Notes under the pieces: generated by a model | The model's input: the letters and a program-made list of their open reading frames with translations, nothing else | The model's database searches: none | Told to the model about the DNA's origin: nothing | Part shown: positions 1,463 to 64,000 of the stretch, in pieces | How positions within the stretch are numbered: position 1 is the stretch's first letter | Layout of the letters: each line of letters starts with the position of its first letter | NCBI RefSeq assembly: GCF_032444005.1 | Contig: NC_091291.1 | Location: 139,314,001 to 139,378,000 of the forward strand | DNA length: 64,000 bases | DNA from: Ranitomeya imitator | Taxonomy: Eukaryota | Direction of reading: 5' to 3' | Made by a program: the position numbers and the translations under genes

Positions 1463-4400
1463 ATGGGATCTGAAATTATATATATGACCTGGAACATACG
1501 GGGTATTAAGACTCCTCGGAAGAAAGTTAAAGTATTTTCACAGATCAAAAAACACAATCCTCATGTCGTGGCATTGATGGAGACACACCTGACTAGGGAT
1601 ACGGTTCGATGTATACAAAAGCCATGGGTACAGTGGTCGCTCCATGCATTCCATACTAGCTACTCAAGAGGGGTCTCCTTATTGATACACAGGGGGGTTA
1701 GGTGGGAGGCGAGGGAGGCACGGCGGGATCCGGAGGGCCGCTTTGTTTTTGTACATGCAATTCTCAATTCATGTGAATATGTGATACTTTGTGTTTATAA
1801 CCCTCCCCCTGCTGGTATGTCGGTTCTCCGTATGGCATTGGGTTTCTCCTTAAAATATCCAGATGCCAATGTTATCTGCATGGGTGACTTCAACCTAGTA
1901 ATGGACCATTCTAAGGACAGAGTGAGGTTGGATAACACAGCATCCGGGGAGTCTTTGCCTCAATCGCCCTCCCAGCTGGCGCTGTTTATGGATGGCAGCG
2001 GTTGGTTGGACTTGTGGAGAATGAGTCATCCAGAGGATAGAGGGTATACCTGCCACTCATCCACCAAACAATCTTTATCTCGTATAGATTATATATTTGG
2101 ATCTAGTGGCGTGGCACTGCAGGTGGATAATATTGAACATGGTAACAGGGGGATCTCGGACCACAGTCCAGTAATTCTTAAACTTAAATATGGTCAATCC
2201 AATAACAATAGATCCTGGAAATTAAACCCTTTCTGGTTGAAATTGATAGATTCAAGTGACAGGACAGTCGAACAATTAAATAGTTTTATTTTAGCACATC
2301 CAGAACCCCAGAATCTTGGTTTATTTTGGGACACTCTGAAGGCATATTTAAGGGGATGCTTGTCCTCTACAATCTCTTACATTAAAAGGGTGACGGCGGG
2401 GGAGGATGACGAGATGGAGCAACGATTAAAGGATTCAGAGGCTACATATATAGCAAATCAGACCAGCAGTAACAGAGCTGAGTGGCTCACCTCCCAGAGA
2501 TTATATGCCCAACATATAGACGTTAAATCGAAACGTAAATTATTCTTTACCCGCCAGTCCTATTTTGAGCTGGGGAACCAGGCCAGTACGCTCTTGGCTT
2601 TCTTAGTGCGCCAACACAATACATCCAACACAATATTACAAATCCGTATGCCTGATGGTACATTAGTATCCTCTACTGATGAGATACTTCAAGGTTTTCA
2701 TGATTATTATAATTTGTTATACAAATCTAGTAGCGGTTTTGATACTAATGAATGTTTGGATTATTTATCGGATATAACGTTTCCCTCGTTGAGCCCATCC
2801 CAACAGGCCTTTATGGATGCGGAGTTTACTTTGGAGGAAGTGGAGCAGGCTATAGCGGACATGGCTACAGGGAAGGCCCCGGGTCCTGATGGATTCCCCA
2901 TTGAGCTATATAGGAAATACAGGGACAAGTTGGCGCCACTTCTATTGAAGGTACTCGGGGGAATATGGAGGGGAGAGTCTGTCCCTGAAACGTTTTATGA
3001 TGCCAATATTATAGTACACAGGAAAGAGGGGAAGGATCCTCTCGATTGTGGATCGTACCGACCTATATCCCTGGTGAACGTAGATTACAAGATTTTTACT
3101 AAAATTCTGGCTACCAGACTGAATACGATTATATTAGATCTCATACACCCAGATCAAACAGGCTTTATGCCTGGGAAAAGTACTTCCATCAATATTAGAC
3201 GGGTCCAATCGGTTATTCAATATAGCTCTTTGGAGCCAGATAATAAGTGGGCATTGGCATCGTTGGATGCAGCCAAAGCTTTTGACTCCCTCGAGTGGTC
3301 CTTTCTGTTTGCATGTTTGCGGAAGTACGGTTTTGGGGACAGATTTCTGAAAGGGATAGGAACATTATATACGAAACCTAGGGCGCGTATGATAGTGAAT
3401 GGCTCAATATCCGAGCCTTTTTCTTTACATAGAGGGACTCGCCAAGGGTGCCCTCTCTCTCCTGCTCTATTTGCATTGGCAATAGAGGCTCTGGCAATAC
3501 AGATGAGATCCTCCAGCGACATCAAGGGGATACGCATTGCAGATCGGGTAGATATTATTGGCCTCTATGCTGATGATATGGTGGTATTTATGGATCAAAC
3601 AGAGGATACGCTACCAAAAGTAATAACAATTATAGACAAATTTAGCAAATTCTCTGGTCTTTATATAAATTGGGATAAGTCTGCCCTGATGCCTCTTTCT
3701 CATGTCCCAATGTTGCGTCTCGGGACTCTCTCGGCGTTACCCATTGTCTCTAATTTCAAATATCTAGGAATACATATGTCTCAACATAGTAGATTTGATT
3801 TACAATTTAACATTTACCCATTAATTGATCTGGTAAAATCTAAATTTAATACTTGGGATAAACTCCCTCTTTCTGTGGCTGGCCGCATTAATTTGATCAA
3901 AATGATACTGCTTCCCAAGTTGAACTACTGCATTCAACATAGTGCTGTCCCAATACCTAAATCCCTCTTTGCGACTCTAAATTCCCTAACCACGTCCTTT
4001 ATATGGGGGAAAAGTAGGCCTAAACTTAGGTTATCTACTCTACAGAGACCGAGACGGGGAGGAGGAGCGGCTTTGCCAGACTTCTACTTATATTATCTAG
4101 CCGGGCAGGTTAAAATGATAAATAAGTGGATGCCCAATAATTCTAATCCTCTTCCTAATTCAGAGAGTCATTTGCTTTACTCTGCTAGGATCGATTGTCC
4201 ACTGGGGTTTTTGGAGATGGAGAGGGTCGGTGTTCCCCGTTTGCTTCCTTTGCTTCGGTTGGCAAGATCAATATGGAGTCAAATAAAAAAAATAACCAAA
4301 TTTGTTGATATAGTGGCTGAAATGCCACTGTGGAATAACAGTTATCTCCCGGGTTTGTTGGGTCACCCATCCACGGAATTTTGGATATCACACGGTGTTC

Positions 4401-5236
4401 TCTCAGTAGGAAATGTACACAACCAGGGTTCTTTTACCTCCTTTGAACAATTACAAAATACTTATAACATCCCAAGATCCCAGTTTTTCCGCTATCTGCA
4501 GTTGAGATCAGCCTTTCAATCACACATGCGAAATGTGGGTACGGGTCGAGCCATTTCATCTCTTCCACTGATAGGTATTCTCAATTCACAAGGCCCTCAA
4601 GGACTTATCTCCTCTTTATACACTTATCTATTATCCATAGGAGAGGGGTCTACTATAGATTCTATTAAGAAAAGGTGGGAGGGGCTTCTTCCGGATACGC
4701 TGGGGGAAGAATGGGAAGACATTTTGGAATCTCCAACTAAGGTTTCCCCATCAATTAACAATAGGATGACTCAGCTGTACATAATATATCAATCCTATCT
4801 GACCCCGACTCGTCTTTTCAAGATGGGACGTCTCCATTCGTCAGATTGTCTGAGATGTCACTTAAGTGATGCGGATTTTATTCATATGATATGGAGATGT
4901 CCCATTATCTCTCATTATTGGAAAGAGGTGACAACATTGTTGACATCCTTGCTGTTGATCCCTGTCCCACTTGAGCCATTGACCTGCTTATTTGGGGTGT
5001 GGGATGCAGGAGTTTGGGACCACCACACTGGGATTTTTTTGCGAGAGACACTGTTCCTGGCGCGAAAAGTACTGGCGCTGAGATGGATGGGTGGTTCTTA
5101 CCCATCTCTTAGAGCTTGGGTGGATTTAGTGAACTCAATTATCCCGTATGAACGGACACTATATCAGAATAGAGGATGTCCAGATAAATTTGAGAAAATA
5201 TGGGGTAAATGGAACTCCTCTCATCTTACTCTATAA
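1463..5236 (+). CDS. L1 ORF2p (APE endonuclease, reverse transcriptase, C-terminal CCHC), 1257 aa
   Basis: Endonuclease motifs TWNIRG, ETH, GDFN, SRIDY, SDHS. RT motifs DAAKAFD, QGCPLSP, YADD, KYLGI. C-terminal CLRC...HMIWRC. Confidence 0.97.
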   Translation: MGSEIIYMTWNIRGIKTPRKKVKVFSQIKKHNPHVVALMETHLTRDTVRCIQKPWVQWSLHAFHTSYSRGVSLLIHRGVRWEAREARRDPEGRFVFVHAILNSCEYVILCVYNPPPAGMSVLRMALGFSLKYPDANVICMGDFNLVMDHSKDRVRLDNTASGESLPQSPSQLALFMDGSGWLDLWRMSHPEDRGYTCHSSTKQSLSRIDYIFGSSGVALQVDNIEHGNRGISDHSPVILKLKYGQSNNNRSWKLNPFWLKLIDSSDRTVEQLNSFILAHPEPQNLGLFWDTLKAYLRGCLSSTISYIKRVTAGEDDEMEQRLKDSEATYIANQTSSNRAEWLTSQRLYAQHIDVKSKRKLFFTRQSYFELGNQASTLLAFLVRQHNTSNTILQIRMPDGTLVSSTDEILQGFHDYYNLLYKSSSGFDTNECLDYLSDITFPSLSPSQQAFMDAEFTLEEVEQAIADMATGKAPGPDGFPIELYRKYRDKLAPLLLKVLGGIWRGESVPETFYDANIIVHRKEGKDPLDCGSYRPISLVNVDYKIFTKILATRLNTIILDLIHPDQTGFMPGKSTSINIRRVQSVIQYSSLEPDNKWALASLDAAKAFDSLEWSFLFACLRKYGFGDRFLKGIGTLYTKPRARMIVNGSISEPFSLHRGTRQGCPLSPALFALAIEALAIQMRSSSDIKGIRIADRVDIIGLYADDMVVFMDQTEDTLPKVITIIDKFSKFSGLYINWDKSALMPLSHVPMLRLGTLSALPIVSNFKYLGIHMSQHSRFDLQFNIYPLIDLVKSKFNTWDKLPLSVAGRINLIKMILLPKLNYCIQHSAVPIPKSLFATLNSLTTSFIWGKSRPKLRLSTLQRPRRGGGAALPDFYLYYLAGQVKMINKWMPNNSNPLPNSESHLLYSARIDCPLGFLEMERVGVPRLLPLLRLARSIWSQIKKITKFVDIVAEMPLWNNSYLPGLLGHPSTEFWISHGVLSVGNVHNQGSFTSFEQLQNTYNIPRSQFFRYLQLRSAFQSHMRNVGTGRAISSLPLIGILNSQGPQGLISSLYTYLLSIGEGSTIDSIKKRWEGLLPDTLGEEWEDILESPTKVSPSINNRMTQLYIIYQSYLTPTRLFKMGRLHSSDCLRCHLSDADFIHMIWRCPIISHYWKEVTTLLTSLLLIPVPLEPLTCLFGVWDAGVWDHHTGIFLRETLFLARKVLALRWMGGSYPSLRAWVDLVNSIIPYERTLYQNRGCPDKFEKIWGKWNSSHLTL

Positions 5237-24028: not shown

Positions 24029-25678
24029 ATGGTTTTAGATGACGAGGAAAAAGCTAACATATTAAACACCTTCTTCTCCACGGTATTCACGGTGGAAAAT
24101 GAAATGCTAGGTGAAATCCCAAGAAACAATGAAAACCCTATATTAAGGGTCACAAATCTAACCCAAGAAGAGGTGCGAAACCGGCTAAATAAGATTAAAA
24201 TAGATAAATCTCCGGGTCCGGATGGCATACACCCACGAGTACTAAGAGAACTAAGTAATGTAATAGATAAACCATTATTTCTTATTTTTAGGGACTCTAT
24301 AGCGACAGGGTCTGTTCCGCAGGATTGGCGCATAGCAAATGTGGTGCCAATATTCAAAAAGGGCTCTAAAAGTGAACCTGGAAATTATAGGCCAGTAAGT
24401 CTAACCTCTATTGTTGGTAAAATATTTGAAGGGTTTCTGAGGGATGTTATTCTGGATTATCTCAATGAGAATAACTGTTTAACTCCATATCAGCATGGGT
24501 TTATGAGAAATCGCTCCTGTCAAACCAATCTAATCAGTTGTTATGAAGAGGTAAGCTATAGGCTGGACCACGGTGAGTCATTGGACGTGGTATATCTCAA
24601 TTTTTCCAAAGTGTTTGATACCGTGCCGCACAAGAGGTTGGTACACAAAATGAGAATGCTTGGTCTGGGGGAAAATGTGTGTAAATGGGTTAGTAACTGG
24701 CTTAGTGATAGAAAGCAGAGGGTGGTTATAAATGGTATAGTCTCTAACTGGGTCGCTGTGACCAGTGGGGTACCGCAGGGGTCAGTATTGGGACCTGTTC
24801 TCTTCAACATATTCATTAATGATCTGGTAGAAGGTTTACACAGTAAAATATCGATATTTGCAGATGATACAAAACTATGTAAAGCAGTTAATACAAGAGA
24901 AGATAGTATTCTGCTACAGATGGATCTGGATAAGTTGGAAACTTGGGCTGAAAGGTGGCAGATGAGGTTTAACAATGATAAATGTAAGGTTATACACATG
25001 GGAAGAAGGAATCAATGTCACCATTACACACTGAATGGGAAACCACTGGGTAAATCTGACAGGGAGAAGGACTTGGGGATCCTAGTTAATGATAAACTTA
25101 CCTGGAGCAGCCAGTGCCAGGCAGCAGCTGCCAAGGCAAACAGGATCATGGGGTGCATTAAAAGAGGTCTGGATACACATGATGAGAGCATTATACTGCC
25201 TCTGTACAAATCCCTAGTTAGACCGCACATGGAGTACTGTGTCCAGTTTTGGGCACCGGTGCTCAGGAAGGATATAATGGAACTAGAGAGAGTACAAAGG
25301 AGGGCAACAAAATTAATAAAGGGGATGGGAGAACTACAATACCCAGATAGATTAGCGAAATTAGGATTATTTAGTCTAGAAAAAAGACGACTGAGGGGCG
25401 ATCTAATAACCATGTATAAGTATATAAGGGGACAATACAAATATCTCGCTGAGGATCTGTTTATACCAAGGAGGGTGACGGGCACAAGGGGGCATTCTTT
25501 GCGTCTGGAGGAGAGAAGGTTTTTCCACCAACATAGAAGAGGATTCTTTACTGTTAGGGCAGTGAGAATCTGGAATTGCTTGCCTGAGGAGGTGGTGATG
25601 GCGAACTCAGTCGAGGGGTTCAAGAGAGGCCTGGATGTCTTCCTGGAGCAGAACAATATTGTATCATACAATTATTAG
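24029..25678 (+). pseudogene. CR1 reverse transcriptase region of ORF2
   Basis: PGPDG, YRPVSLTS, GVPQGSVLGP and FADD motifs. Motif A reads YLNFSKVFD instead of YLDFSKAFD (catalytic Asp to Asn, codon 24599-24601). Confidence 0.9.
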
Positions 25679-39455: not shown

Positions 39456-39856
39456 TCATTGCTGCGGAGTGGTGGAGTTTCTTAGGAAGGGCTCTAGGAT
39501 GAGGTCGGAGTTCTTCCCCTCGCTTTCCTCGCTGTACAGGTCGTGTTCCTTGATGTAGTCCAGGACGGCATCGGGCACCAGGTACCGCACGCTCATGCCC
39601 CGCCGCAGGGCTCGGCGCACCTTGGTGGAGGAGATGTCGTTGGTGATCCACTCCTGCACCAGGTGGATATTGTCCCGGTGCTTCCACAGGACATCGGACT
39701 CGTAGATGAACTTGCTGGCGTCGCTGCCCATCCGGGTGATGCAGACCAGACCGAACGACGACACAATTTCTACAACGTGCTCCGGTTTCCAAAGGTTCGG
39801 GACCCCGAGAGACTCCAACATGTCGGCTCCACAAAGAAGCTTAACCCGAGGAGGCG
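39456..39856 (-). CDS. nmnat1: NMNAT1 last coding exon (401 nt)
   Basis: [16 protein letters not shown]...[27 protein letters not shown], containing the ISSTxxR motif. TTTCAG acceptor. Confidence 0.96.
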
Positions 39857-43235: not shown

Positions 43236-44067
<832 letters not shown>

Positions 44068-46140: not shown

Positions 46141-47434
46141 TATAGTCTTGAGTGAAAACCTATGTTTACAGCCCCTAAGAAGAGCAATGTGTCTCCAAGA
46201 GGACCGACTACAAAGTTGAGGCTTTGGCTTCTTGCTAATCTGCAGACAGTAGAAAAGAGGCAGATGGACCCGTCAGCATTCTCCTCTGCCTCCCCCTTAC
46301 ACATGGATGTGTTTTCAAGAAGAAAAGTGGGGTATCTCCCCTCCGACATTGGAGGAGAGTCGGGAGCCCCCATAACCACTGGATGGGCAATATATCTGTA
46401 AGCCTTATGGCCACTTATACACACGACTGCACGATCAGATTCTAACCACCGTTGCACCAGGATTGTACATTTGTATAAGACATGATATAAAATAAATATT
46501 AAAGGAAAACTCCGCTTCCAGTTGACAAAATTCTGTAAAGGGCAACAAAGGAAATGTGAAAGGCGGCAACGTATAAAAGAGGAGAAACAGCGTAAAATCC
46601 AAAGAGTTGGCGACATTCACTCACCCTGTGCTCGCTGTGATCTCCTCGTACTGGCGTCACCCTGAGCAGGTATTACCAGGCCCCTGATCGGCGTTCGCCT
46701 CTGGTGACTACACCGCCAGGTGCAGACATTACTGGGGTCTCTACGTCTGCACCTGGACAGTCGGGGGCACAGGGCTAAAATTATTTTGGATAAACCCAAC
46801 ATAAGAAGCCGGGAGGATGGATCACCCCAAATCCGCGGTGCTATATCCCATCACTGATAAAATAAAGGGGAGAAATCGGCAAATGATACAAAAGCAAAGA
46901 AAACAATAACATAAAATGAATGAAACAAAGCATAAGGTGCAGCGTCTGGATCACGACGCAAGGGTGAGGTGGGGGCTTATATGTCTGTATTCAATGGGTG
47001 AGCCGTAATGTGGAATAATAGATAGATGATAAGAGATAGGTAATTGATAGAGAGATAATAAATGTTAGACGATAATAGATAAATAGATAATAAATAGATA
47101 ATTCCCTCCTTAAATCGGTCACTCTCGTTACAACAAAATTTGCAAAAATTTATAGAACAAAGGAATATAAAAAAACTAGAAATAAATCTTATGAGAGAAT
47201 TCTGCTTCTATATCCACTTATGAGCCACTTCTCCAGCTGAACTCATAATTCACCCTAAAATCTGTCCTGCAAAAACAGACTGTCAACTCACTGAGAGATC
47301 AGATTACAGCTGTCCAATGAAGCTTTTGGAAACAGAGAGTAGATAAACAGAGGCACAGGCAGATCCATGCAACAGACTTATATTGTGCAGTGCTGGATTC
47401 ACAGCTTCACTGTTTAGTCCTGCAGCATAATGGC

Positions 47435-47900: not shown

Positions 47901-48758
47901 ATTATAATGTACTCCATGCTGCTGCTTCTGAACATGCTACAAAGAGACAGGGGAGCAATAATTCCCCTTTTCTTTGTGTGTTGTGTATAGGAAACAAAGA
48001 GGCTAGTCTACTCCCACAGGCTTAAAGAGAACTGAAAATTTCAGAAAGAAGCTACAGATGGGACAACGTGTTAAAATGTTAAGATGCATGTGATGTATTG
48101 ACTCATGCACACACATGCCAGTTTATTTTGAAAAGAGACCAGTCAGGGGGTTATACATGGCAGATCATAGAGTGGAAAGAGTGAAAAAGCATCTACAGTC
48201 TCAGGGAGGGTGGAGAAAACAGGATGACAATTTGGAGGTAAGCACATGTAGGTAAAGCATTTCAGAAATAAAGTTGTGCTGATACATAAAAACTAATGAA
48301 GGTAGCAATATCCAGGATATATTACTGAGAGGGGCATGGTCACAAGTGAAAAGTCCGAACCAGCGAGAAGACTGCAAACTGGAATCAGGAGGTCTGAAAA
48401 TGAATGATAATTGCAGAATGAAACTTAGTACCTAATAACATATGTAACAATCATTTTCTCTACATTCTAATTACTGAAAATAATGAAAATGTCCCCACCT
48501 ATGACCAGCCCCCTCCACAGAGTCCACGCATGTGTACAGCAGAGGGCGCTGCCCGCACAGTATCACAGACTGGAGAATGGTCCCAGTGTGCGGCCGGCAG
48601 ATGCCCACACATCACATAGCTCCGCTGAATACTTTTGTCTGCATCCAACCAACTGTATGAACCATTGAGATGCTAATCCGTCCCAGGCCGCTCCCTTCCC
48701 CCCCTTTCACAGATGCCACGCTGCCCCGTGCCACTATTGTCCTGTAGCTGCATCCGCC

Positions 48759-48881
48759 ATGCTCCTTTGGGTGGCTCAGTCTCTGGCTATCACAGTGATG
48801 GTCTGTGTCATAGTCACTAACTGGCTCGTGGTGAAGAGTGCCGAGGTCCTGCACGGCGTCATCCGCAAGCTCCACCGGTAA
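48759..48881 (+). CDS. Candidate 40-aa single-pass membrane micropeptide, or the terminal exon of an unresolved gene
   Basis: tccgccATG, then MLLWVAQSLAITVMVCVIVTNWLVVKSAEVLHGVIRKLHR*. 30 of the 39 codons after the ATG end in G or C. Strong upstream acceptor CCCCCTTTCACAG at 48712. Confidence 0.5.
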   Translation: MLLWVAQSLAITVMVCVIVTNWLVVKSAEVLHGVIRKLHR

Positions 48882-49364
48882 CGGAGACTGGAGTCCGGCG
48901 CAATGGTGAAGAATTAACCCATGCGACACCAGAAGCAAAGTTGGCATCCTGTTTCCAAAAAGACAAATCTTGGGTCATAAGGCCGAAGTGACAAGTGCAG
49001 AAGTGGCGCAGAAAAGAAGAAAACCGAACAAAACTGGCAAAAGAATTAAAAAAAGAAATGTTGGTTTATGAAGGTGGGTACGAGGCGACATCGCGCATGT
49101 TCCCGGAAATTCCTCTGGAAAACGTAAGGTGAAATTGTGCAACTTTCTCATTAAGGCCGGAGACACACTAACATTTGTAAAATCGCTCCGATGTTGTTCC
49201 CGAAAAGTCAGACGAGTGTCATGCGACCTTCGTGCAAGTACAATGCGATTTTCATCACCTAGCATCCGAAAGAAATGTGACTACAATGCGATTTTAACAT
49301 TAGCGTTTACAAAGAGTAATTATCTGTCATATAAAGTTTTAAAAGGAAATATTCTCCAATACAT

Positions 49365-49520
49365 ATATAGGAGTTTCTCACCAAAATTAGAATATCATCA
49401 AAAAGTGAATTTATTTCAGTTCTTCAATACAAAAAGTGAACCTCATATATTATATAGAGTCATTACAGACAGAGTGAACTATTTCACGTGTTTATTTCTG
49501 TTAATGTTGATGATTATGGG
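49365..49520. mobile_element. Tc1-like terminal fragment
   Basis: TTCTCACCAAAATTAGAATATCATCAAAAAG... resembles an amphibian Tc1 end as I recall it. Confidence 0.55.
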
Positions 49521-49829
49521 CGGATAGTATTGGGGTTGATGTCGGCTTTGTATTGGCAGCTGAAATCAAGCCCAGGGGTTAATAATGGAGAGGCGTCATT
49601 TGGTCAGTACCGGACACCAGTATTGTAGCCAAAACCAGGAGTGGAACAATCAGAGGAAAAGTAGAAACTTGTCACCGCTTCTGTATTTATCACGCACTGC
49701 TGGCTTTGGTTACAAATACAGATATAAAATCCTGACTGTGTGAACACGGCCTTCAGAGTCTCCTCTGCAGCGTAGGAGGAGAGCAGTACAGCGGGCACAG
49801 AATGAGCCGGGAGCCGCGTTACATTATTC

Positions 49830-49930
49830 ATGGCTGAGGATCAGGTGACAGACGACATGATCCACTACTTTCTAGCCCACGTCTCCCATCACCTCGGCCG
49901 CTGGTTACCCCGAACCCACAAATCCAGATT
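49830..49930 (+). CDS. Nested four-TM protein gene (TMEM274-like by position), coding exon 1
   Basis: MAEDQVTDDMIHYFLAHVSHHLGRWLPRTHKSR(L), then a GTAAGT donor in phase 2. A second in-frame ATG lies at 49857. Confidence 0.78.
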
Positions 49931-50013
49931 GTAAGTGCGCCCCCTATCTGCTACACGAGCAGCGACCCGCCATGATGGTCCCTAATCTCTCCTGTCTTCT
50001 CCCTTTTCTCCAG

Positions 50014-50076
50014 GCTGGTGACCGTGGCATCCTCGGGGGTCGCCCTGACCATCCCGCAGCTGTATGTTCTGCTCAG
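50014..50076 (+). CDS. Nested four-TM protein gene, coding exon 2 (TM1)
   Basis: Long pyrimidine tract plus CAG, LVTVASSGVALTIPQLYVLL, GTCAGT donor; phase 2 to phase 2. Confidence 0.82.
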
Positions 50077-50938
50077 GTCAGTAGAAGTCTTTACCATATA
50101 TAATACCCAATGAGATATTTTCATGCATTTTGTACAGGATGCATTTTGTAATCGTGGCTTCTAGAATATGAGCCCCCATTGTTTACACTGCTGGCTGCAA
50201 TAAAGGGGTTGTACAGGGTAGGAAAAACATGGCTGCCTTCCTCCAAAAGCACACAATGGAATATTACAATATTTACAGCCGGCATGTGGGGTCTTACCTG
50301 TCCTCTCAGCTTGGCTGGTGGTCCTACATGATTTCGGGATGACTGACCCTGCGGCCTGTCCCATAGCTCTACCTCCCGCTCACCGCGTCCTCCATGATAA
50401 ACCTGAGCACTAAATACTACAAGGTATAAAACCTCCATAAAGATGATGCCGTTATAGGAAGGTAACGCAGCAACATATTACACAGAGCAATGCAGAGGAG
50501 GGATAGAGGGGCGACTGGCAGGATAAGGGTGCAGCATTTTAATATGCCCCCATCCTAGGCCTGTGTGGGCAATGGCAGAGGAAACGCTCCTATTCTATAG
50601 TATAGGGCAGCAAATTATGGCACTCCTGCTATTGTTACACTACACCTCCCAGCATGCCCTGACTGCCTGCACAAGAGCTGGACCCCGACATAGGTGATTC
50701 CTCTCCACAGCCCAAGACCCCGACTGATGAAAGGATTTAGCATCGTATAGCAGGTATGTTACAGAGCTGCGCACCCTTCCTGATCGCTGCCAGTGCCCCT
50801 TTAAAGTGTTGTCTGGTTTAGGTAATACTTTATTTAATAGAGTTCCACGTTGATAAACTGTATGGAGGTGGGGGGGGGGGGGGGGTCCGCATCTCAGGCT
50901 GGTGTTTGTAGATCGGACTAACAATATTTTCCCCCCAG

Positions 50939-51018
50939 GCCGAGCTCATCGCGATTTTGCAGCCAACCTCTTCTCAACAACCTGATCAGCAACATCGGCT
51001 TCACCCTATTCGCAACCG
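50939..51018 (+). CDS. Nested four-TM protein gene, coding exon 3
   Basis: TTTTCCCCCCAG acceptor, PSSSRFCSQPLLNNLISNIGFTLFAT, GTGAGG donor; phase 2 to phase 1. Confidence 0.82.
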
Positions 51019-51231
51019 GTGAGGGTCCGCACAACATTACATGCAGCATATAAAGGGGGATCTAATAAAAAAAACAAAGGGGCTCATATGTTGGGGCTAC
51101 GTGGATGTTTTTGAAAAATCTAAACTTTTTGAATATTCCTTAGAGTGGTCTCCAACCGGTGACTCTCCAGCTACTAAAAAGCTACAATGCCAAACATTCC
51201 TAAACAGCCGCAGCCCACTGTCATGCGCTAA

Positions 51232-54200
51232 CAGACCACCTTCTATTACTGCCCTGCGCTGACAGTCCACCTTCTATTACTGCCCAGCGCTGACAGTCCA
51301 CCTTCTATTATTGCCCGGCGAAGACAGTCCACCTTCTATTATTGCCCAGCGCTGACAGTCCACCTTCTATTATTGCCCTGCGCTGACAGTCCACCTTCTA
51401 TTATTGCCCAGCGCTGACAGTCCACCTTCTATTATTGCCCGGCGAAGACAGTCCACCTTCTATTATTGCTCGGCGCTGACAGTCCACCTTCTATTATTGC
51501 TCGGCGCTGACAGTCCACCTTCTATTACTGCCCTGCGCTGACAGTCCACCTTCTATTACTGCAGGCGATGACAGTCCACCTTCTCTTACTGCCCTGCGCT
51601 GACAGTCCACCTTCTCTTACTGCCCTGCGCTGACAGTCCACCTTCTATTACTGCCCTGCGAAGACAGTCCACCTTCTATTACTGCCCTGCGCTGACAGTC
51701 CACCTTCTATTACTGCCCTTACAGTCCACCTTCTATTACTGCCCTGCGCTGACAGTCCACCTTCTATTACTGCCCAGCGAAGACAGTCCACCTATTACTG
51801 CCCTGCGCTGACAGTCCACCTTCTATTACTGCCCTGCGCTGACAGTCCACCTTCTATTACTGCCCAGCGAAGACAGTCCACCTTCTATTACTGCCCTGCG
51901 CTGACAGTCCACCTTCTATTACTGCCCTGCGCTGACAGTCCACCTTCTATTACTGCCCTGCGCTGACAGTCCACCTTCTATTACTGCCCTGCGCTGACAG
52001 TCCACCTTCTATTACTGCCCTTACAGTCTACCTTCTATTACTGCCCTGCGCTGACAGTCCACCTTCTATTACTGCCCTGCGCTGACAGTCCACCTTCTAT
52101 TACTGCCCAGCGAAGACAGTCCACCTTCTATTATTGCCCTGCGCTGACAGTCCACCTTCTATTACTGCCCTTACAGTCCACCTTCTATTACTGCCCTTAC
52201 AGTCCACCTTCTCTTACTGCCCTGCGCTGACAGTCCACCTTCTCTTACTGCCCTGACAGTCCACCTTCTATTACTGCCCTGCGCTGACAGTCCACCTTCT
52301 ATTACTGCCCAGCGAAGACAGTCCACCTTCTATTACTGCCCTGCACTGACAGTCCACCTTCTATTACTGCCTGCGCTGACAGTCAACCTTCTATTATTGC
52401 CCTGCGCTGACAGTCCACCTTCTATTACTGCCCTGCGCTGACAGACCACCTTCTCTTACTGCCCAGCGCTGACAGACCACCTTCTCTTACTGCCCTGCGC
52501 TGACAGTCCACCTTCTATTACTGCCTGCGCTGACAGTCCACCTTCTATTATTGCCCTGCGCTGACAGACCACCTTCTCTTACTGCCCTGCGCTGACAGTC
52601 CACCTTCTATTACTGCCCTGCGCTGACAGTCCACCTTCTATTACTGCCCTGCGCTGACAGTCCACCTTCTATTACTGCCCTGCGCTGACAGTCCACCTTC
52701 TATTACTGCCCTGCGCTGACAGTCCACCTTCTATTACTGCCCTGCGCTGACAGTCCACCTTCTATTACTGCCCTGCGCTGACAGACCACCTTCTATTACT
52801 GCCCTGCGCTGACAGTCCACCTTCTCTTACTGCCCTGCGCTGACAGTCCACCTTCTATTACTGCCCTGCGCTGACAGTCCACCTTCTATTACTGCCCTGC
52901 GCTGACAGTCCACCTTCTATTACTGCCCTGCGCTGACAGTCCACCTTCTATTACTGCCCTGCGCTGACAGTCCACCTTCTCTTACTGCCCTGCGCTGACA
53001 GTCCACCTTCTCTTACTGCCCTGCGCTGACAGTCCACCTTCTCTTACTGCCCTGCGCTGACAGTCCACCTTCTCTTACTGCCCTGCGCTGACAGTCCACC
53101 TTCTATTACTGCCCTGCGCTGACAGTCCACCTTCTATTACTGCCCTGCGCTGACAGTCCACCTTCTCTTACTGCCCTGCGCTGACAGTCCACCTTCTCTT
53201 ACTGCCCTGCGCTGACAGTCCACCTTCTATTACTGCCCTGCGCTGACAGTCCACCTTCTATTACTGCCCAGCGAAGACAGTCCACCTTCTATTATTGCCC
53301 TGCGCTGACAGTCCACCTTCTATTACTGCCCTTACAGTCCACCTTCTATTACTGCCCTTACAGTCCACCTTCTCTTACTGCCCTGCGCTGACAGTCCACC
53401 TTCTCTTACTGCCCTGACAGTCCACCTTCTATTACTGCCCTGCGCTGACAGTCCACCTTCTATTACTGCCCAGCGAAGACAGTCCACCTTCTATTACTGC
53501 CCTGCACTGACAGTCCACCTTCTATTACTGCCTGCGCTGACAGTCAACCTTCTATTATTGCCCTGCGCTGACAGTCCACCTTCTATTACTGCCCTGCGCT
53601 GACAGACCACCTTCTCTTACTGCCCAGCGCTGACAGACCACCTTCTCTTACTGCCCTGCGCTGACAGTCCACCTTCTATTACTGCCTGCGCTGACAGTCC
53701 ACCTTCTATTATTGCCCTGCGCTGACAGACCACCTTCTCTTACTGCCCTGCGCTGACAGTCCACCTTCTATTACTGCCCTGCGCTGACAGTCCACCTTCT
53801 ATTACTGCACTGCACTGACAGTCCACCTTCTATTACTGCCCTGCGCTGACAGTCCACCTTCTATTACTGCCCTGCGCTGACAGTCCACCTTCTATTACTG
53901 CCCTGCGCTGACAGTCCACCTTCTATTACTGCCCTGCGCTGACAGACCACCTTCTATTACTGCCCTGCGCTGACAGTCCACCTTCTCTTACTGCCCTGCG
54001 CTGACAGTCCACCTTCTATTACTGCCCTGCGCTGACAGTCCACCTTCTATTACTGCCCTGCGCTGACAGTCCACCTTCTATTACTGCCCTGCGCTGACAG
54101 TCCACCTTCTCTTACTGCCCTGCGCTGACAGTCCACCTTCTCTTACTGCCCTGCGCTGACAGTCCACCTTCTCTTACTGCCCTGCGCTGACAGTCCACCT

Positions 54201-54458
54201 TCTCTTACTGCCCTGCGCTGACAGTCCACCTTCTATTACTGCCCTGCGCTGACAGTCCACCTTCTATTACTGCCCTGCGCTGACAGTCCACCTTCTATTA
54301 CTGCCCTGCGCTGACAGTCCACCTTCTATTACTGCCCTGCGCTGACAGTCCACCTTCTATTACTGCCCTGCGCTGACAGTCCACCTTCTATTACTGCCCT
54401 GCGCTGACAGTCCACCTTCTCTTACTGCCCTGCGCTGACAGTCCACCTTCTATTGCAG
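51232..54458. repeat. 31-bp tandem array, about 100 copies, filling intron 3 of the nested gene
   Basis: Unit TTCTATTACTGCCCTGCGCTGACAGTCCACC, running directly into the exon 4 acceptor. Confidence 0.97.
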
Positions 54459-54589
54459 CGTTTGCGCTCATCCTCGTACTTGTGGAGCTGATACCGTGTT
54501 GGCTGAAGACCCTTTTTCACATATTTGGGGTGGCCTCCTTCATCGAGGGGATCTGCACCATTCTAGTGACATCTCTGGCTGCAGAATGT
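54459..54589 (+). CDS. Nested four-TM protein gene, coding exon 4
   Basis: AFALILVLVELIPCWLKTLFHIFGVASFIEGICTILVTSLAAEC, GTAAGT donor; phase 1 to phase 0. Confidence 0.82.
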
Positions 54590-54936
54590 GTAAGTGCTCG
54601 AGTTGTTGATCACAACCCAAGAACCACTACATGAAGAATTAGTAAAAGTTTACAGAACTGAATCTATAAGGAAACTGCAGTATATTGTGAATATATCCCC
54701 ACATATATTGCACCAAGCAGTCCTAGTGCCATACAATAGCTGTAGGGCCGATGCAAAATGTATAACAGAAACCCCTCAACCAACATGTACAAATGGCTTT
54801 CTTTCAAGTTAACCAGGGATATTTAGTGCACCCCTGTATCGCAGCCCCCGTGTGACCTTTAGTGGCAGCCATATTCGTTATCATTGATCTGCATTTGACA
54901 GAACACTATAAACGTGAAGTCTTCCATGTTTTGCAG

Positions 54937-55003
54937 GCCATGAGCACTCCAGCTCTGTACTACCTGTCTGTGGTGCAGTCCTCCATCAGCGTCTTATCTA
55001 CAG
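54937..55003 (+). CDS. Nested four-TM protein gene, coding exon 5
   Basis: TTTTGCAG acceptor, AMSTPALYYLSVVQSSISVLST, GTGTGT donor; phase 0 to phase 1. Confidence 0.75.
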
Positions 55004-55812
55004 GTGTGTACATATCCCTATATACAGCCACACACAGACATCAGAACACGTGATAATCCTACAGCCTGTGACCTACAAGCAGCCGACTGCCATAAAACAA
55101 ATTGCATATATGTGTGTGAACAGGGTGGTATCATAAGGCGAGTTATTTCTGGAGGCTTAGCTCTCATTTCTGGATGCTTTGGGGACACTTACCGTCACTT
55201 ATCTTTGCTTTATGCCATTATTGTTGGCACTGAGCAGAATTACCCCAAAAAGATAATTGCAATTCTTTATCAAAGGCTTAAATCAAATCTCTGGCTTTGC
55301 CCCATGACAACACTTCCTGATCCTGTGTCCACACAGCTCGGTACCACCATGGGAAGAGATAGAGACTTGTACCCCAATAAGTCAGACATTGATGACATCT
55401 CTATTTAATATACTAGGAAACCCCTTACAGCACTGCTCCCCAACCTACAAAACTACAGCCCCCATCATGACGGGAGTAGCAGCTGCAGTGCCATATTATT
55501 GCCTTGTAGAGACGATACGCCTACGATCGATTATCTGTGCATGTGCTGAGCAGGTGAAAGTGAACTATTGCTCTCTGATACCAGCCACTTAAAGCTAGAA
55601 GAAAGGATCCCTGCCCTCTCCACTTTAGGAAAATAAGACCTTATTCACCCCATCATGTACTGGCCCTATTTTACGGTCCATGTTATGGCTGCAATTCCTG
55701 ACCTGACTGAGACCTAACATCGCTGTATAAACTGCACCAAGAGCTTTGGAACAAATGGGCTCTTACAAATATCAGACACTGACTTTAGAACTATGGACTT
55801 TTTTTTTTGCAG

Positions 55813-55943
55813 TGTTTTTCCTGATCGTTGGCTCTTTCTGGCTTTCCAACTCCATTTTTCCTGGGATGGTCTTTAGTAAAGAAACTAGAACCGGCATCTG
55901 CTATGAAGTAGTGACCTGCTGCCCATGTACATGGCACGTCTGA
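55813..55943 (+). CDS. Nested four-TM protein gene, coding exon 6 (stop)
   Basis: T-tract plus GCAG acceptor, VFFLIVGSFWLSNSIFPGMVFSKETRTGICYEVVTCCPCTWHV*. First downstream AATAAA at 56686-56691. Confidence 0.75.
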
Positions 55944-58019
55944 GGAGTTGTAGCCCCCCGAAGTCACTGCTTCATAAAGAACTACTGTACTTGTGGACAA
56001 TGGAAAGGGGGGACGGGCTGAGAACAGTGAGGATTAATGCGCTTCATACCTATTGGTCCTGCAAATCAGTCCACAAAGGCAGCAGAACAGAGGAGCATTC
56101 AGCTTCACTGGGAAACAATGGTCCCTTCCCACTATGAAACTGGGGAGAGGGATTCCAGCAGCGGCCAGGAGAGGGGCAGCCGATGGTGGGGGGGCTCCTG
56201 ACTGCCGAAGTCTGCCAATGATTGGCGGATCCTGTGCTAACAGTTTTTGGCTGAGTTCCCAAATGGACAAATTATTGTGTCACAAAGATTAGAGGGGACA
56301 TAAAGGAGCAGAGACACGTGGGGGGGGGGGGGGGGGGGCATTTTTCGCAGCAGAAAACCACAGGCAAAGGCTGACAGCCTGCAGTAAGGCAGAACTCCCA
56401 CTGTCACACACCTGCTCATGTATATGGGTGCACTCATCTCTGCATATAATGAGCTTTTTCCAGTTATATGATAGTAAATGATACAATTTCCATTCATACC
56501 ATATAGCGCTTTAAGTCCTAAAAATGCCCAGCTCTTAAAAGGGGATGTCCAAATTAGGATGACCCTACAACTGATTGCTGCAGGACTTGTTGGCATCCCT
56601 GGTGGTCAGTGCGAGGCTGCACCTTTTTCAGGCTTCGTGTACTAAAGGACCCCCTCAGTCTATGCCCAAGAATGGGTCACTATGTAATAAATTTTTGACC
56701 AATGTTAAACTATTTGTGACAATGACTCCCACTCAGGGTAATATAATGGAGTCCTTCATGTTCCCCATGATATCTGCTAGAAGACACTAAAGCAGACAAT
56801 AGTTATAGAATGTATAAAAGTAAAAGAATATACAGCTCCACAATGTAGTTCATTATACATCTTTCCCCTGAGCTACTGCATCGGCCAAAAGGAAAAAAAA
56901 AATGCCACCAACCAGGAGATGGCGCTGCTGTAATTCTGGTTTACATAAAGACGCTTCAGATGATCCTAAACTACAGAACGTTTGGAAAAGTTCAGTCGCT
57001 TGTGATTGGCTGGCAGAACTCATGTTGATCTGGCGGAATGCGCAGTGAGGTATACCAAGAGGTGAGAAGTCTGTGACCCCCACCCTCCATACATGTCCTG
57101 TCCTGACAAGGTCACTGCCTTCCACTAAATCAGTACACTCCTCTCCTGAAATACTCTGTGCTGCAAGACACCATGTAAAGCTCAATTTCTCATTAAATAA
57201 AATGAGCATAAACATATATCTGATCTCATTGGTTTATTATAAAGAGTTTCTATTTGATTAGTCATAAATGACCACGCGAGACGCCACGGAAACCGGACAA
57301 GATCCTTGGTATAGTGAATATATGTGTAAAGCCGCCTGTAGATTTGGTTCTCTTACATAAATAACCTCAGGGACGTTACATCCGGCTTAATCAGGGTCTT
57401 TAATTTAAAAAATCTTTACTGATAAGGTGATCACAAACTTTCCTCCTGCCGGGATCCCCAGTGATCAGCTCTAATCTGTTTTCAATTTCTCTGCCGCGCC
57501 CCCAGAGGAAACATTGCATTACGCCGTAAAATTAATGGCGTAATCTGTGTAATGCAGAACAGGAAGGATCCTCCAGCGAAGAGACATTTTCTAGAACCGC
57601 TCCACTCTGCTATGAGGGTCCTAGACAGAGGACCCTCCTCTATTAACTCAGAATTCTCTAATAAAATCCGTTTATTACAATGTAGAATCTAAGAATGACA
57701 TTATGGGGGAAATGAGTAATTTGTTTGGTCACTGGTAATGCACATAGAAAAAAATGTCCTACAGGAAAAGTGTCCAATATCTCAGAGAGGCCCCGGAAGG
57801 AACCAGGTTTATAAAGTCATCAACCACAGATGAAAGACAAGACAGTAACATGTGCAGCAGGACATGGAAAGGATGAGGCTTGTGGCCATGATGTTCTGGC
57901 TACACAGAGGAAGAACATAACAGACACATACAACACAGAGGGTCCAAAAAAGTTTTCAGAAAAGTGGATGACCCCCACACGAGCAGGAGATGGGGGCCCA
58001 ACGAGGGCCAATAGGGGGA

Positions 58020-62441: not shown

Positions 62442-62642
<201 letters not shown>

Positions 62643-62645
62643 TAG

Positions 62646-62813
<168 letters not shown>

Positions 62814-63126
62814 TAGATTCACAAGAACGTGTTATGGCTGCAGTCCCAATTCCTGGCCTGACTGCGACTCTCCTGAGCCGGGCTAGGACCCTCGTAGTCA
62901 GATCTGATGCTGTTATAGATCAGGTCCAGAAACCAGGAATTACTGCCACAGGAATCATAACATCCTTCATGTGAATATGTCCTAAATCAGGGATCACAAA
63001 CCTGCGGCTGCCCAGTGGTTGGGGAATCTACAACCCCTATCTGTTATATGACCCTTCTATACCCATCCAGTAATCCAGAATGTCTGACAATCCAGCGCCG
63101 ATCTTGTCCCATTGATACCGGATTAA

Positions 63127-63369
<243 letters not shown>

Positions 63370-63372
63370 TAA

Positions 63373-64000
<628 letters not shown>

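What the first reader, a model, noticed from the sequence alone, without database searches (positions are those of the whole stretch)
49830..55943. Intact six-exon four-TM gene nested antisense in NMNAT1 intron 1
Seen: exons of 101+63+80+131+67+131 = 573 nt join through canonical GT-AG sites with matching phases into a stop-free 190-aa protein. It has four hydrophobic segments, one Cys in each predicted outer loop (FCSQP and AECAM) and a VTCCPC tail that could be palmitoylated. The ORF track shows only its last two exons, as parts of unrelated-looking ORFs. From memory: human NMNAT1 intron 1 contains the antisense pseudogene TMEM274P, and the loop-Cys layout resembles the uncharacterised TMEM272 family. 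Inference: a functional orthologue of a gene lost in humans, of unknown function, whose transcription converges on NMNAT1 transcription.
Basis: partly seen in the sequence, partly recalled or inferred. Interest (0 to 1): 0.8.

Follow-up and report, generated by a model that had tools for sequence, protein, structure and literature searches.

The report
Frog orthologue of the TMEM274 gene
This is a real, spliced, expressed and intact copy of TMEM274, a small four-helix membrane protein gene of unknown function already described in mouse and reported as a pseudogene in humans, so the gene is ordinary, though its leader exon carries a conserved 40-codon mini-gene.

Summary
The six-exon model is correct: six + strand exons (573 nt, all GT..AG) give a stop-free 190-aa protein. 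It aligns without gaps across all five junctions to annotated and transcript-derived orthologues. These include a rodent protein named Tmem274 (50% identity, E 8e-45), a mollusc and a coral protein (39%).

RNA contigs of this species show junctions 1-2 and 2-3 exactly. A related frog's cDNA is collinear with exons 2-6. dN/dS is 0.16-0.21. The gene order NMNAT1(-), TMEM274(+), LZIC(+) holds in two frogs, a lizard and a mouse. This family was described in 2019 (PMC6886504), so the gene is already known, and its function is untested.

- The conserved start is the second ATG (49857), giving 181 aa.
- The mRNA has a further 5' leader exon ending at 49073, which carries a conserved 40-codon ORF. The scan had already flagged that ORF (s1-295041).
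- Nesting in NMNAT1 intron 1 is not shown. RNA shows a minus-strand spliced transcript diverging from the same promoter region.
- No Pfam family and no significant fold match were found. The fold is only MARVEL/MS4A-like.

The parts
48738..49073 (+). 5' leader exon of the TMEM274 mRNA. The donor is at 49073; the 5' end is uncertain, as contigs begin between 48529 and 48738.
   Evidence: GT..AG joint 49073->49722 (X12) and 49073->50014 (X3), with contigs covering 48529/48552/48738 to 49073; a related frog cDNA (L002) starts with the homologous exon.
48759..48881 (+). Conserved 40-codon upstream ORF encoding a single hydrophobic helix, on the leader exon.
   Evidence: a same-length ORF occurs in Mixophyes, Ascaphus and three Logan transcripts. 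Differences are mostly at third codon positions, with dN/dS 0.05-0.25.
49722..49930 (+). First coding exon: 5'UTR 49722-49829, first ATG 49830, conserved start ATG 49857.
   Evidence: One search gives the acceptor at 49722 and the joint 49930->50014. One search shows all homologues begin at the residue aligned with M10.
50014..50076 (+). Coding exon 2 (TM1).
   Evidence: joints on both sides; L002 cDNA.
50939..51018 (+). Coding exon 3 (outer loop 1 with the invariant Cys, and TM2).
   Evidence: joint 50076->50939 in three runs. An X1 contig has 198 letters beyond the 72 that lie on 50947-51018, equal to exons 4+5.
51217..54454 (+). Array of 106 copies of a 31-bp unit that fills intron 3 up to the acceptor of exon 4.
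   Evidence: It is absent from the orthologous Mixophyes intron.
54459..54589 (+). Coding exon 4 (TM2 end, TM3, outer loop 2 Cys).
   Evidence: this exon alone finds frog orthologues at E 5e-13. L002 and L003 cDNAs.
54937..55003 (+). Coding exon 5 (start of TM4).
   Evidence: collinear with orthologues and with the L002 cDNA.
55813..56014 (+). Coding exon 6 (TM4 end, Cys-rich tail, stop at 55941-55943) plus at least 71 nt of 3'UTR.
   Evidence: L002 aligns 55810-56014 at 87%; conservation with Mixophyes reaches 56236.
47930..48629 (-). Divergent minus-strand spliced transcript: exon down to 48499, intron 48498-48394, exon from 48393 to beyond 47930. It is the probable NMNAT1 5' exons.
   Evidence: CT..AC joint (GT..AG on the minus strand) in X1 and X13. 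One search shows a good donor and a TTTTCAG acceptor.
46677..46802 (-). Candidate alternative NMNAT1 start-codon exon.
   Evidence: 47% identical to the first coding exon of the Mixophyes NMNAT1 model, and followed by GTAATA.
43803..43976 (-). NMNAT1 canonical first coding exon (ATG 43920), with an AG acceptor that requires an upstream exon.
39456..39821 (-). NMNAT1 last coding exon.
   Evidence: E 5.5e-52 to human NMNAT1 (1kqn), residues 159-275.
62469..63579 (+). LZIC coding exons (62469-62575, 62664-62806, ICAT exon ending 63579).

Best explanation
The locus is the anuran orthologue of TMEM274, an ancient metazoan gene for a protein of about 181 aa built almost entirely of four membrane helices. 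Shown: it is transcribed and spliced as predicted, intact, and under purifying selection. It lies between NMNAT1 and LZIC as in other tetrapods. Its mRNA starts with a leader exon that carries a separately conserved 40-codon ORF. Inferred, not shown: the protein has both ends in the cytosol. The two invariant cysteines of the short outer loops form a disulfide. The conserved Cys-rich tail (C..CC.C.WH, kept from coral to frog but lost in mammals and teleosts) is S-acylated or binds metal. The protein would then act as a small MARVEL/MS4A-like tetraspan scaffold or auxiliary subunit in a restricted cell type, rather than as an enzyme or a transporter.
For: Identity:
- Exon 4 alone retrieves frog orthologues.
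- A profile search finds 109 relatives, including 'Tmem274 [Phodopus]' and proteins fused with or named after LZIC.
- The spliced protein is 73% identical to a frog transcript product, 50% to rodent Tmem274 and 39% to mollusc and coral proteins, ungapped across all junctions.
- Synteny is shown.

Expression and splicing:
- One search gives joints 49073->49722, 49930->50014 and 50076->50939.
- The L002 cDNA is collinear with exons 2-6.

Constraint:
- dN/dS is 0.16-0.21.
- All invariant family residues are present.

Fold:
- Four helices, pLDDT 76.8.
- The best solved matches are synaptophysin (Z 9.9), a chain of the dystrophin-glycoprotein complex, CD20 and an Fc-epsilon-RI chain. Predicted-model matches include CASP-like, MS4A18 and TMEM196.
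- A scallop orthologue carries an automatic MARVEL label.

Literature: PMC6886504.
Against: - Function is untested in any species. There is no Pfam family, no PDB sequence match, and all fold matches are below the level that is meaningful for helical bundles.
- Junctions 3-4, 4-5 and 5-6 have no direct read evidence in this species. They rest on orthologue collinearity and on one contig whose length fits.
- The leader has several upstream ATGs, and an exon-1-skipping isoform destroys the frame, so translation of the main ORF may be inefficient.
- The runs are only guessed to be RNA.
Confidence: 0.9

Rival explanations
1. One reading: TMEM274 lies wholly inside NMNAT1 intron 1, antisense to it, so the two transcription units collide and may repress each other.
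For: By MGI coordinates, mouse Tmem274 lies inside the Nmnat1 range, and the Nmnat1 5' end is 27 bp from Lzic. The Ascaphus NMNAT1 gene range encloses the orthologue. The window's NMNAT1 first canonical coding exon has an acceptor and so needs an upstream exon.
Against: RNA contigs show a minus-strand spliced transcript arising beside the TMEM274 leader exon and running away from it. The Mixophyes NMNAT1 model ends before TMEM274, and its start-codon exon maps to 46802-46677 in the window. No block is conserved with Mixophyes between 56.2 and 62.4 kb.
Confidence: 0.35
2. The leader ORF and TMEM274 form one functional unit: a bicistronic mRNA makes a 40-aa single-pass peptide and the four-helix protein, and the two act together in the membrane.
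For: Both lie on one spliced RNA. The ORF has been under protein-level constraint since the split from the Ascaphus lineage. The Mixophyes annotation fuses the peptide's helix to TMEM274.
Against: There is no translation evidence. The ORF may act only as a translational brake on the main ORF. It was not found within 10 kb of the lizard or mouse gene.
Confidence: 0.3
3. The locus is a transcribed relic, with its coding capacity decaying as in humans.
For: Expression is low (word depth 2-6). There is an exon-skipping isoform that destroys the frame and an upstream-ATG-rich leader. A 3.2-kb array has invaded intron 3.
Against: The frame is intact, all invariant residues are kept, and dN/dS is 0.16-0.21.
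Confidence: 0.04

Closest known systems
Mouse Tmem274 / human TMEM274P (Mudge et al. 2019, PMC6886504)
   Same: It has homologous sequence (50% identity to rodent proteins), four helices, the same invariant loop cysteines, and the same neighbours NMNAT1 and LZIC.
   Different: Frog, lizard, shark, mollusc and coral proteins keep an 18-residue Cys-rich C-terminal tail that mammals and teleosts lack. The frog mRNA has a leader exon with a conserved 40-codon ORF, which was not found near the mouse or lizard gene. Nesting in NMNAT1 is not shown here.
MARVEL-domain proteins (synaptophysin, MAL, CMTM, plant CASP-like)
   Same: Both are four-helix membrane bundles of similar size with short loops. 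Synaptophysin is the best solved match (Z 9.9, 131 residues), and CASP-like models recur.
   Different: There is no significant sequence match: 1 of 58 members hits Pfam MARVEL, at E 0.023 and below threshold. The Z-score is in the range expected for unrelated helical bundles.
MS4A family (CD20, Fc-epsilon-RI beta) and a chain of the dystrophin-glycoprotein complex (sarcospan by my reading)
   Same: Tetraspan fold, small size and cytosolic termini, with Z 7.7-9.3.
   Different: There is no sequence similarity. The MS4A disulfide lies within one loop, not between two.
TMEM272
   Same: Only the recalled layout of four helices with loop cysteines.
   Different: It is not among the 30 Swiss-Prot model matches listed. 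No sequence comparison was possible, because no TMEM272 sequence was available from a tool.

Membership tests
TMEM274 | Significant full-length sequence homology to proteins named Tmem274 | tested here: met
   The profile search gives E 8e-49 to Tmem274 [Phodopus]. blastp of the window protein gives E 8e-45 at 50% identity.
TMEM274 | About 160-181 aa, four membrane helices, invariant Cys in each outer loop | tested here: met
   The protein is 181 aa from the conserved Met.
TMEM274 | Position between NMNAT1 and LZIC, on the strand opposite to NMNAT1 | tested here: met
   The window's neighbours are shown. The same order holds in Mixophyes, Podarcis and Mus caroli.
TMEM274 | Lies inside the NMNAT1 transcription unit, as in mouse | tested here: inconclusive
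   Mouse coordinates are nested. In the window, RNA shows a divergent minus-strand transcript next to the leader exon, and the distal region was not testable.
MARVEL domain (PF01284) | Score above the Pfam gathering threshold | tested here: not met
   There are 0 families for the closest orthologue, and 1 of 58 members hits at E 0.023.
MARVEL domain (PF01284) | Fold match clearly above the background for helical bundles | tested here: inconclusive
   Synaptophysin scores Z 9.9, under the roughly 13 advised for helical bundles. Foldseek E-values are all above 0.09 outside the own family.
TMEM272 | Sequence or fold homology | not tested
   No TMEM272 sequence was obtainable from the tools. It is absent from the 30 Swiss-Prot fold matches listed.

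The most novel reading that the evidence does not exclude
In frogs the TMEM274 locus is a true bicistronic gene. A 40-aa single-pass membrane peptide, conserved since the split from the Ascaphus lineage and with only one unannotated match in the protein collection searched, is made from the leader exon. It works with, or regulates, the four-helix TMEM274 protein. The pair is driven from a promoter shared head-to-head with NMNAT1.
Probability: 0.25. Interest if true: 0.6.

Novelty: already known. Interest (0 to 1): 0.25.

Why it matters
TMEM274 is one of the few ancient metazoan genes reported as lost only in humans, and its function is unknown. Frogs keep the full-length form with the Cys-rich tail that mammals have lost. 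They are also easy to manipulate, so an intact, expressed frog copy gives a practical system for a knockout and for localising the protein. As an annotation result, it is an orthologue that related frog genomes already list as an uncharacterised protein.

Tried and rejected
- Pfam on the six exon pieces found nothing, apart from a below-threshold DUF4738 hit on exon 6. Pfam on 58 family members gave only scattered sub-threshold hits.
- An HMM search of PDB sequences found nothing at E up to 10.
- Foldseek against PDB, Swiss-Prot models and AFDB clusters, the ESM Atlas by features and by shape, and VIA-align gave only the family itself plus generic four-helix bundles.
- Rfam on 48-57 kb found nothing, so the conserved intron-2 block is not a known RNA family.
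- The whole spliced 190-aa protein could not be given to the database tools, because it has no reference. Exon pieces and orthologues were used instead, and the structure is that of the 73%-identical orthologue P0006.
- No protein at least 90% identical to the window's was returned. The gene may be unannotated in this genome, but that is not proven.

Full report
**Observation**

I rebuilt the model from the window. Six + strand exons (49830-49930, 50014-50076, 50939-51018, 54459-54589, 54937-55003, 55813-55943) total 573 nt. All are bounded by GT..AG, and they read through to a TGA as a 190-aa protein.

**Is it a gene?**

Exon 4 alone (43 aa) was searched against 1.8 billion representatives and returned five proteins. 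The best two are frog proteins of 169 and 214 aa at 74% and 67% identity. Searching with one of them, and then with a seven-sequence profile, returned 109 relatives. They come from frogs, a newt, lizards, bats, rodents, ray-finned fishes, sharks, coelacanth, a gastropod and a soft coral.

Nearly all are labelled 'uncharacterized'. One is named Tmem274 (Phodopus roborovskii). Several are fused with, or mislabelled as, LZIC, the neighbouring gene.

Aligned locally, the spliced window protein matches these proteins without gaps across every exon junction:
- 73% identity to a frog transcript product (E 5e-92);
- 63% to Ascaphus;
- 52% to a lizard;
- 50% to rodent Tmem274 (E 8e-45);
- 39% to the gastropod and the coral, over the full length.

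All residues invariant in a 58-sequence alignment are present. dN/dS against two related frog cDNAs is 0.21 and 0.16. All homologues begin at the position of the window's second Met. The conserved start is therefore ATG 49857 (181 aa, purine at -3), and the nine residues from ATG 49830 are not conserved.

**RNA**

Two searches found runs that hold both halves of the gene in about the proportion expected for exons plus UTR. It showed the following.
- Contigs of three runs carry the joint 50076->50939.
- One run carries 49930->50014.
- One run carries 49073->49722.
- One run carries 49073->50014.

So junctions 1-2 and 2-3 are exact. The first coding exon begins at 49722, and there is a leader exon ending at 49073. 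The isoform that skips exon 1 loses the frame.

An X1 contig of 270 nt lies with 72 nt on the end of exon 3 and has 198 nt beyond it. That equals exons 4+5 (131+67).

Junctions 3-4, 4-5 and 5-6 were not seen directly in this species. A 938-nt transcript contig from a related frog (L002) is collinear with the leader exon, exons 2-6 and 71 nt of 3'UTR. A second contig (L003) is collinear with exons 3, 4 and 6.

**Surroundings**

- NMNAT1 lies on the minus strand. Its last coding exon (39456-39821) matches human NMNAT1 at E 5.5e-52.
- Its canonical first coding exon is 43976-43803, with an AG acceptor.
- LZIC coding exons lie on the + strand from 62469.
- The order NMNAT1(-), TMEM274(+), LZIC(+) recurs in Mixophyes, Podarcis and Mus caroli.

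**Nested or not?**

In mouse, a table of MGI coordinates puts Tmem274 inside the Nmnat1 range, and the Nmnat1 5' end is 27 bp from Lzic (PMC10376023). The Ascaphus annotation also has NMNAT1 enclosing the gene.

In this window the evidence points the other way.
- RNA contigs of two runs show a 105-nt skip with CT..AC ends at 48394-48498. On the minus strand this is an intron with a good donor and a TTTTCAG acceptor.
- That intron belongs to a transcript that begins at or above 48629 and runs leftwards past 47930.
- The start-codon exon of the Mixophyes NMNAT1 model is homologous to 46802-46677(-).

This looks like a bidirectional promoter at about 48.5-48.7 kb, with divergent rather than convergent transcription. 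I could not show that the minus-strand transcript joins NMNAT1 exon 2. I also could not test for a second NMNAT1 start near LZIC. Nesting is therefore unresolved, and I put it at about one in three for this species.

**What the protein is like**

- AlphaFold2 on the closest orthologue, with the family alignment, gives four long helices plus an N-terminal amphipathic helix (pLDDT 76.8, pTM 0.62).
- Arg and Lys residues are more frequent before helix 1 than in the other loops. Together with the short loops, this suggests both ends are cytosolic. The two invariant cysteines would then lie in the two outer loops.
- The tail motif (Cys, Cys-Cys, Cys, Trp-His) is conserved from coral to frog but missing in mammals and teleosts.
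- No Pfam family is hit, and there is no PDB sequence relative.
- Fold searches return the family's own members, then generic tetraspan bundles. These are synaptophysin (Z 9.9), LRRC8A, a chain of the dystrophin-glycoprotein complex, CD20, an Fc-epsilon-RI chain, CASP-like models, MS4A18 and TMEM196. All are below the level that means more than a common helical arrangement.

My working mechanism is therefore an inference. I read it as a small MARVEL/MS4A-like scaffold or auxiliary subunit with an outer-face disulfide and an acylated or metal-binding cytosolic tail.

**Comparison with what is known**

Mudge et al. 2019 (PMC6886504) described human TMEM274P as a unitary pseudogene and mouse Tmem274 as a new coding gene. 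They reported synteny back to coelacanth, possible relatives in scallop and Trichoplax, and weak expression everywhere. The present locus is its frog orthologue, so the main finding is already known. The only later mentions I found are gene lists.

**Beyond the finding**

The leader exon carries a 40-codon ORF (48759-48881) that the scan had already flagged (s1-295041).
- It has the same length and stop in Mixophyes, Ascaphus and three transcript contigs.
- Substitutions are concentrated at third codon positions, with dN/dS 0.05-0.25.
- Its only database match is one unannotated transcript product.
- It was not detected within 10 kb of the lizard or mouse gene.

This is the most novel element at the locus, and it deserves its own follow-up.

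**Verdict**

The gene is already known as a family and its function remains open. Interest is low to moderate.

Noticed in passing
window 48759-48881 (+): A 40-codon ORF for a single hydrophobic helix sits on the TMEM274 leader exon. It is conserved in length and sequence in Mixophyes, Ascaphus and three frog transcript contigs, with dN/dS 0.05-0.25. Its only database hit is an unannotated Logan product.
   Followed up: partly
window 47930-48629 (-): A minus-strand spliced transcript (intron 48498-48394) diverges from the TMEM274 promoter region. It is probably the NMNAT1 5' exons, and a candidate alternative NMNAT1 start-codon exon lies at 46802-46677.
   Followed up: partly
window 50338-50454 (intron 2): This block is 83% identical to Mixophyes (a 57-nt core with 55 matches) and partly conserved in Ascaphus, which is more than the flanking coding exons. 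It has stops in all + frames, contains a donor-like CAAG|GTATAA, and has no Rfam match. X1 contigs flank it. It could be a poison exon or a regulatory element.
   Followed up: partly
window 51217-54454: An array of 106 copies of a 31-bp unit fills intron 3 and ends 4 bp before exon 4. Each unit carries CTGAC plus a pyrimidine run and a CAG. It is confined to this intron and absent from the Mixophyes orthologous intron.
   Followed up: partly
window 49382-49663: A high-copy element lies in the intron between the leader exon and exon 1, with word depth in the thousands in all four runs and many loose ends.
   Followed up: no
window 1463-5236 and 21808-25678 (+): There are long ORFs typical of LINE-type retrotransposons (1257 aa; 684 and 549 aa), and many minisatellite arrays across the window.
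   Followed up: no
L002 191-338: In the related frog transcript, the segment between the leader exon and exon 2 does not align with the window's exon 1, and it gives a different N-terminus. This is an alternative or strongly diverged first coding exon.
   Followed up: no
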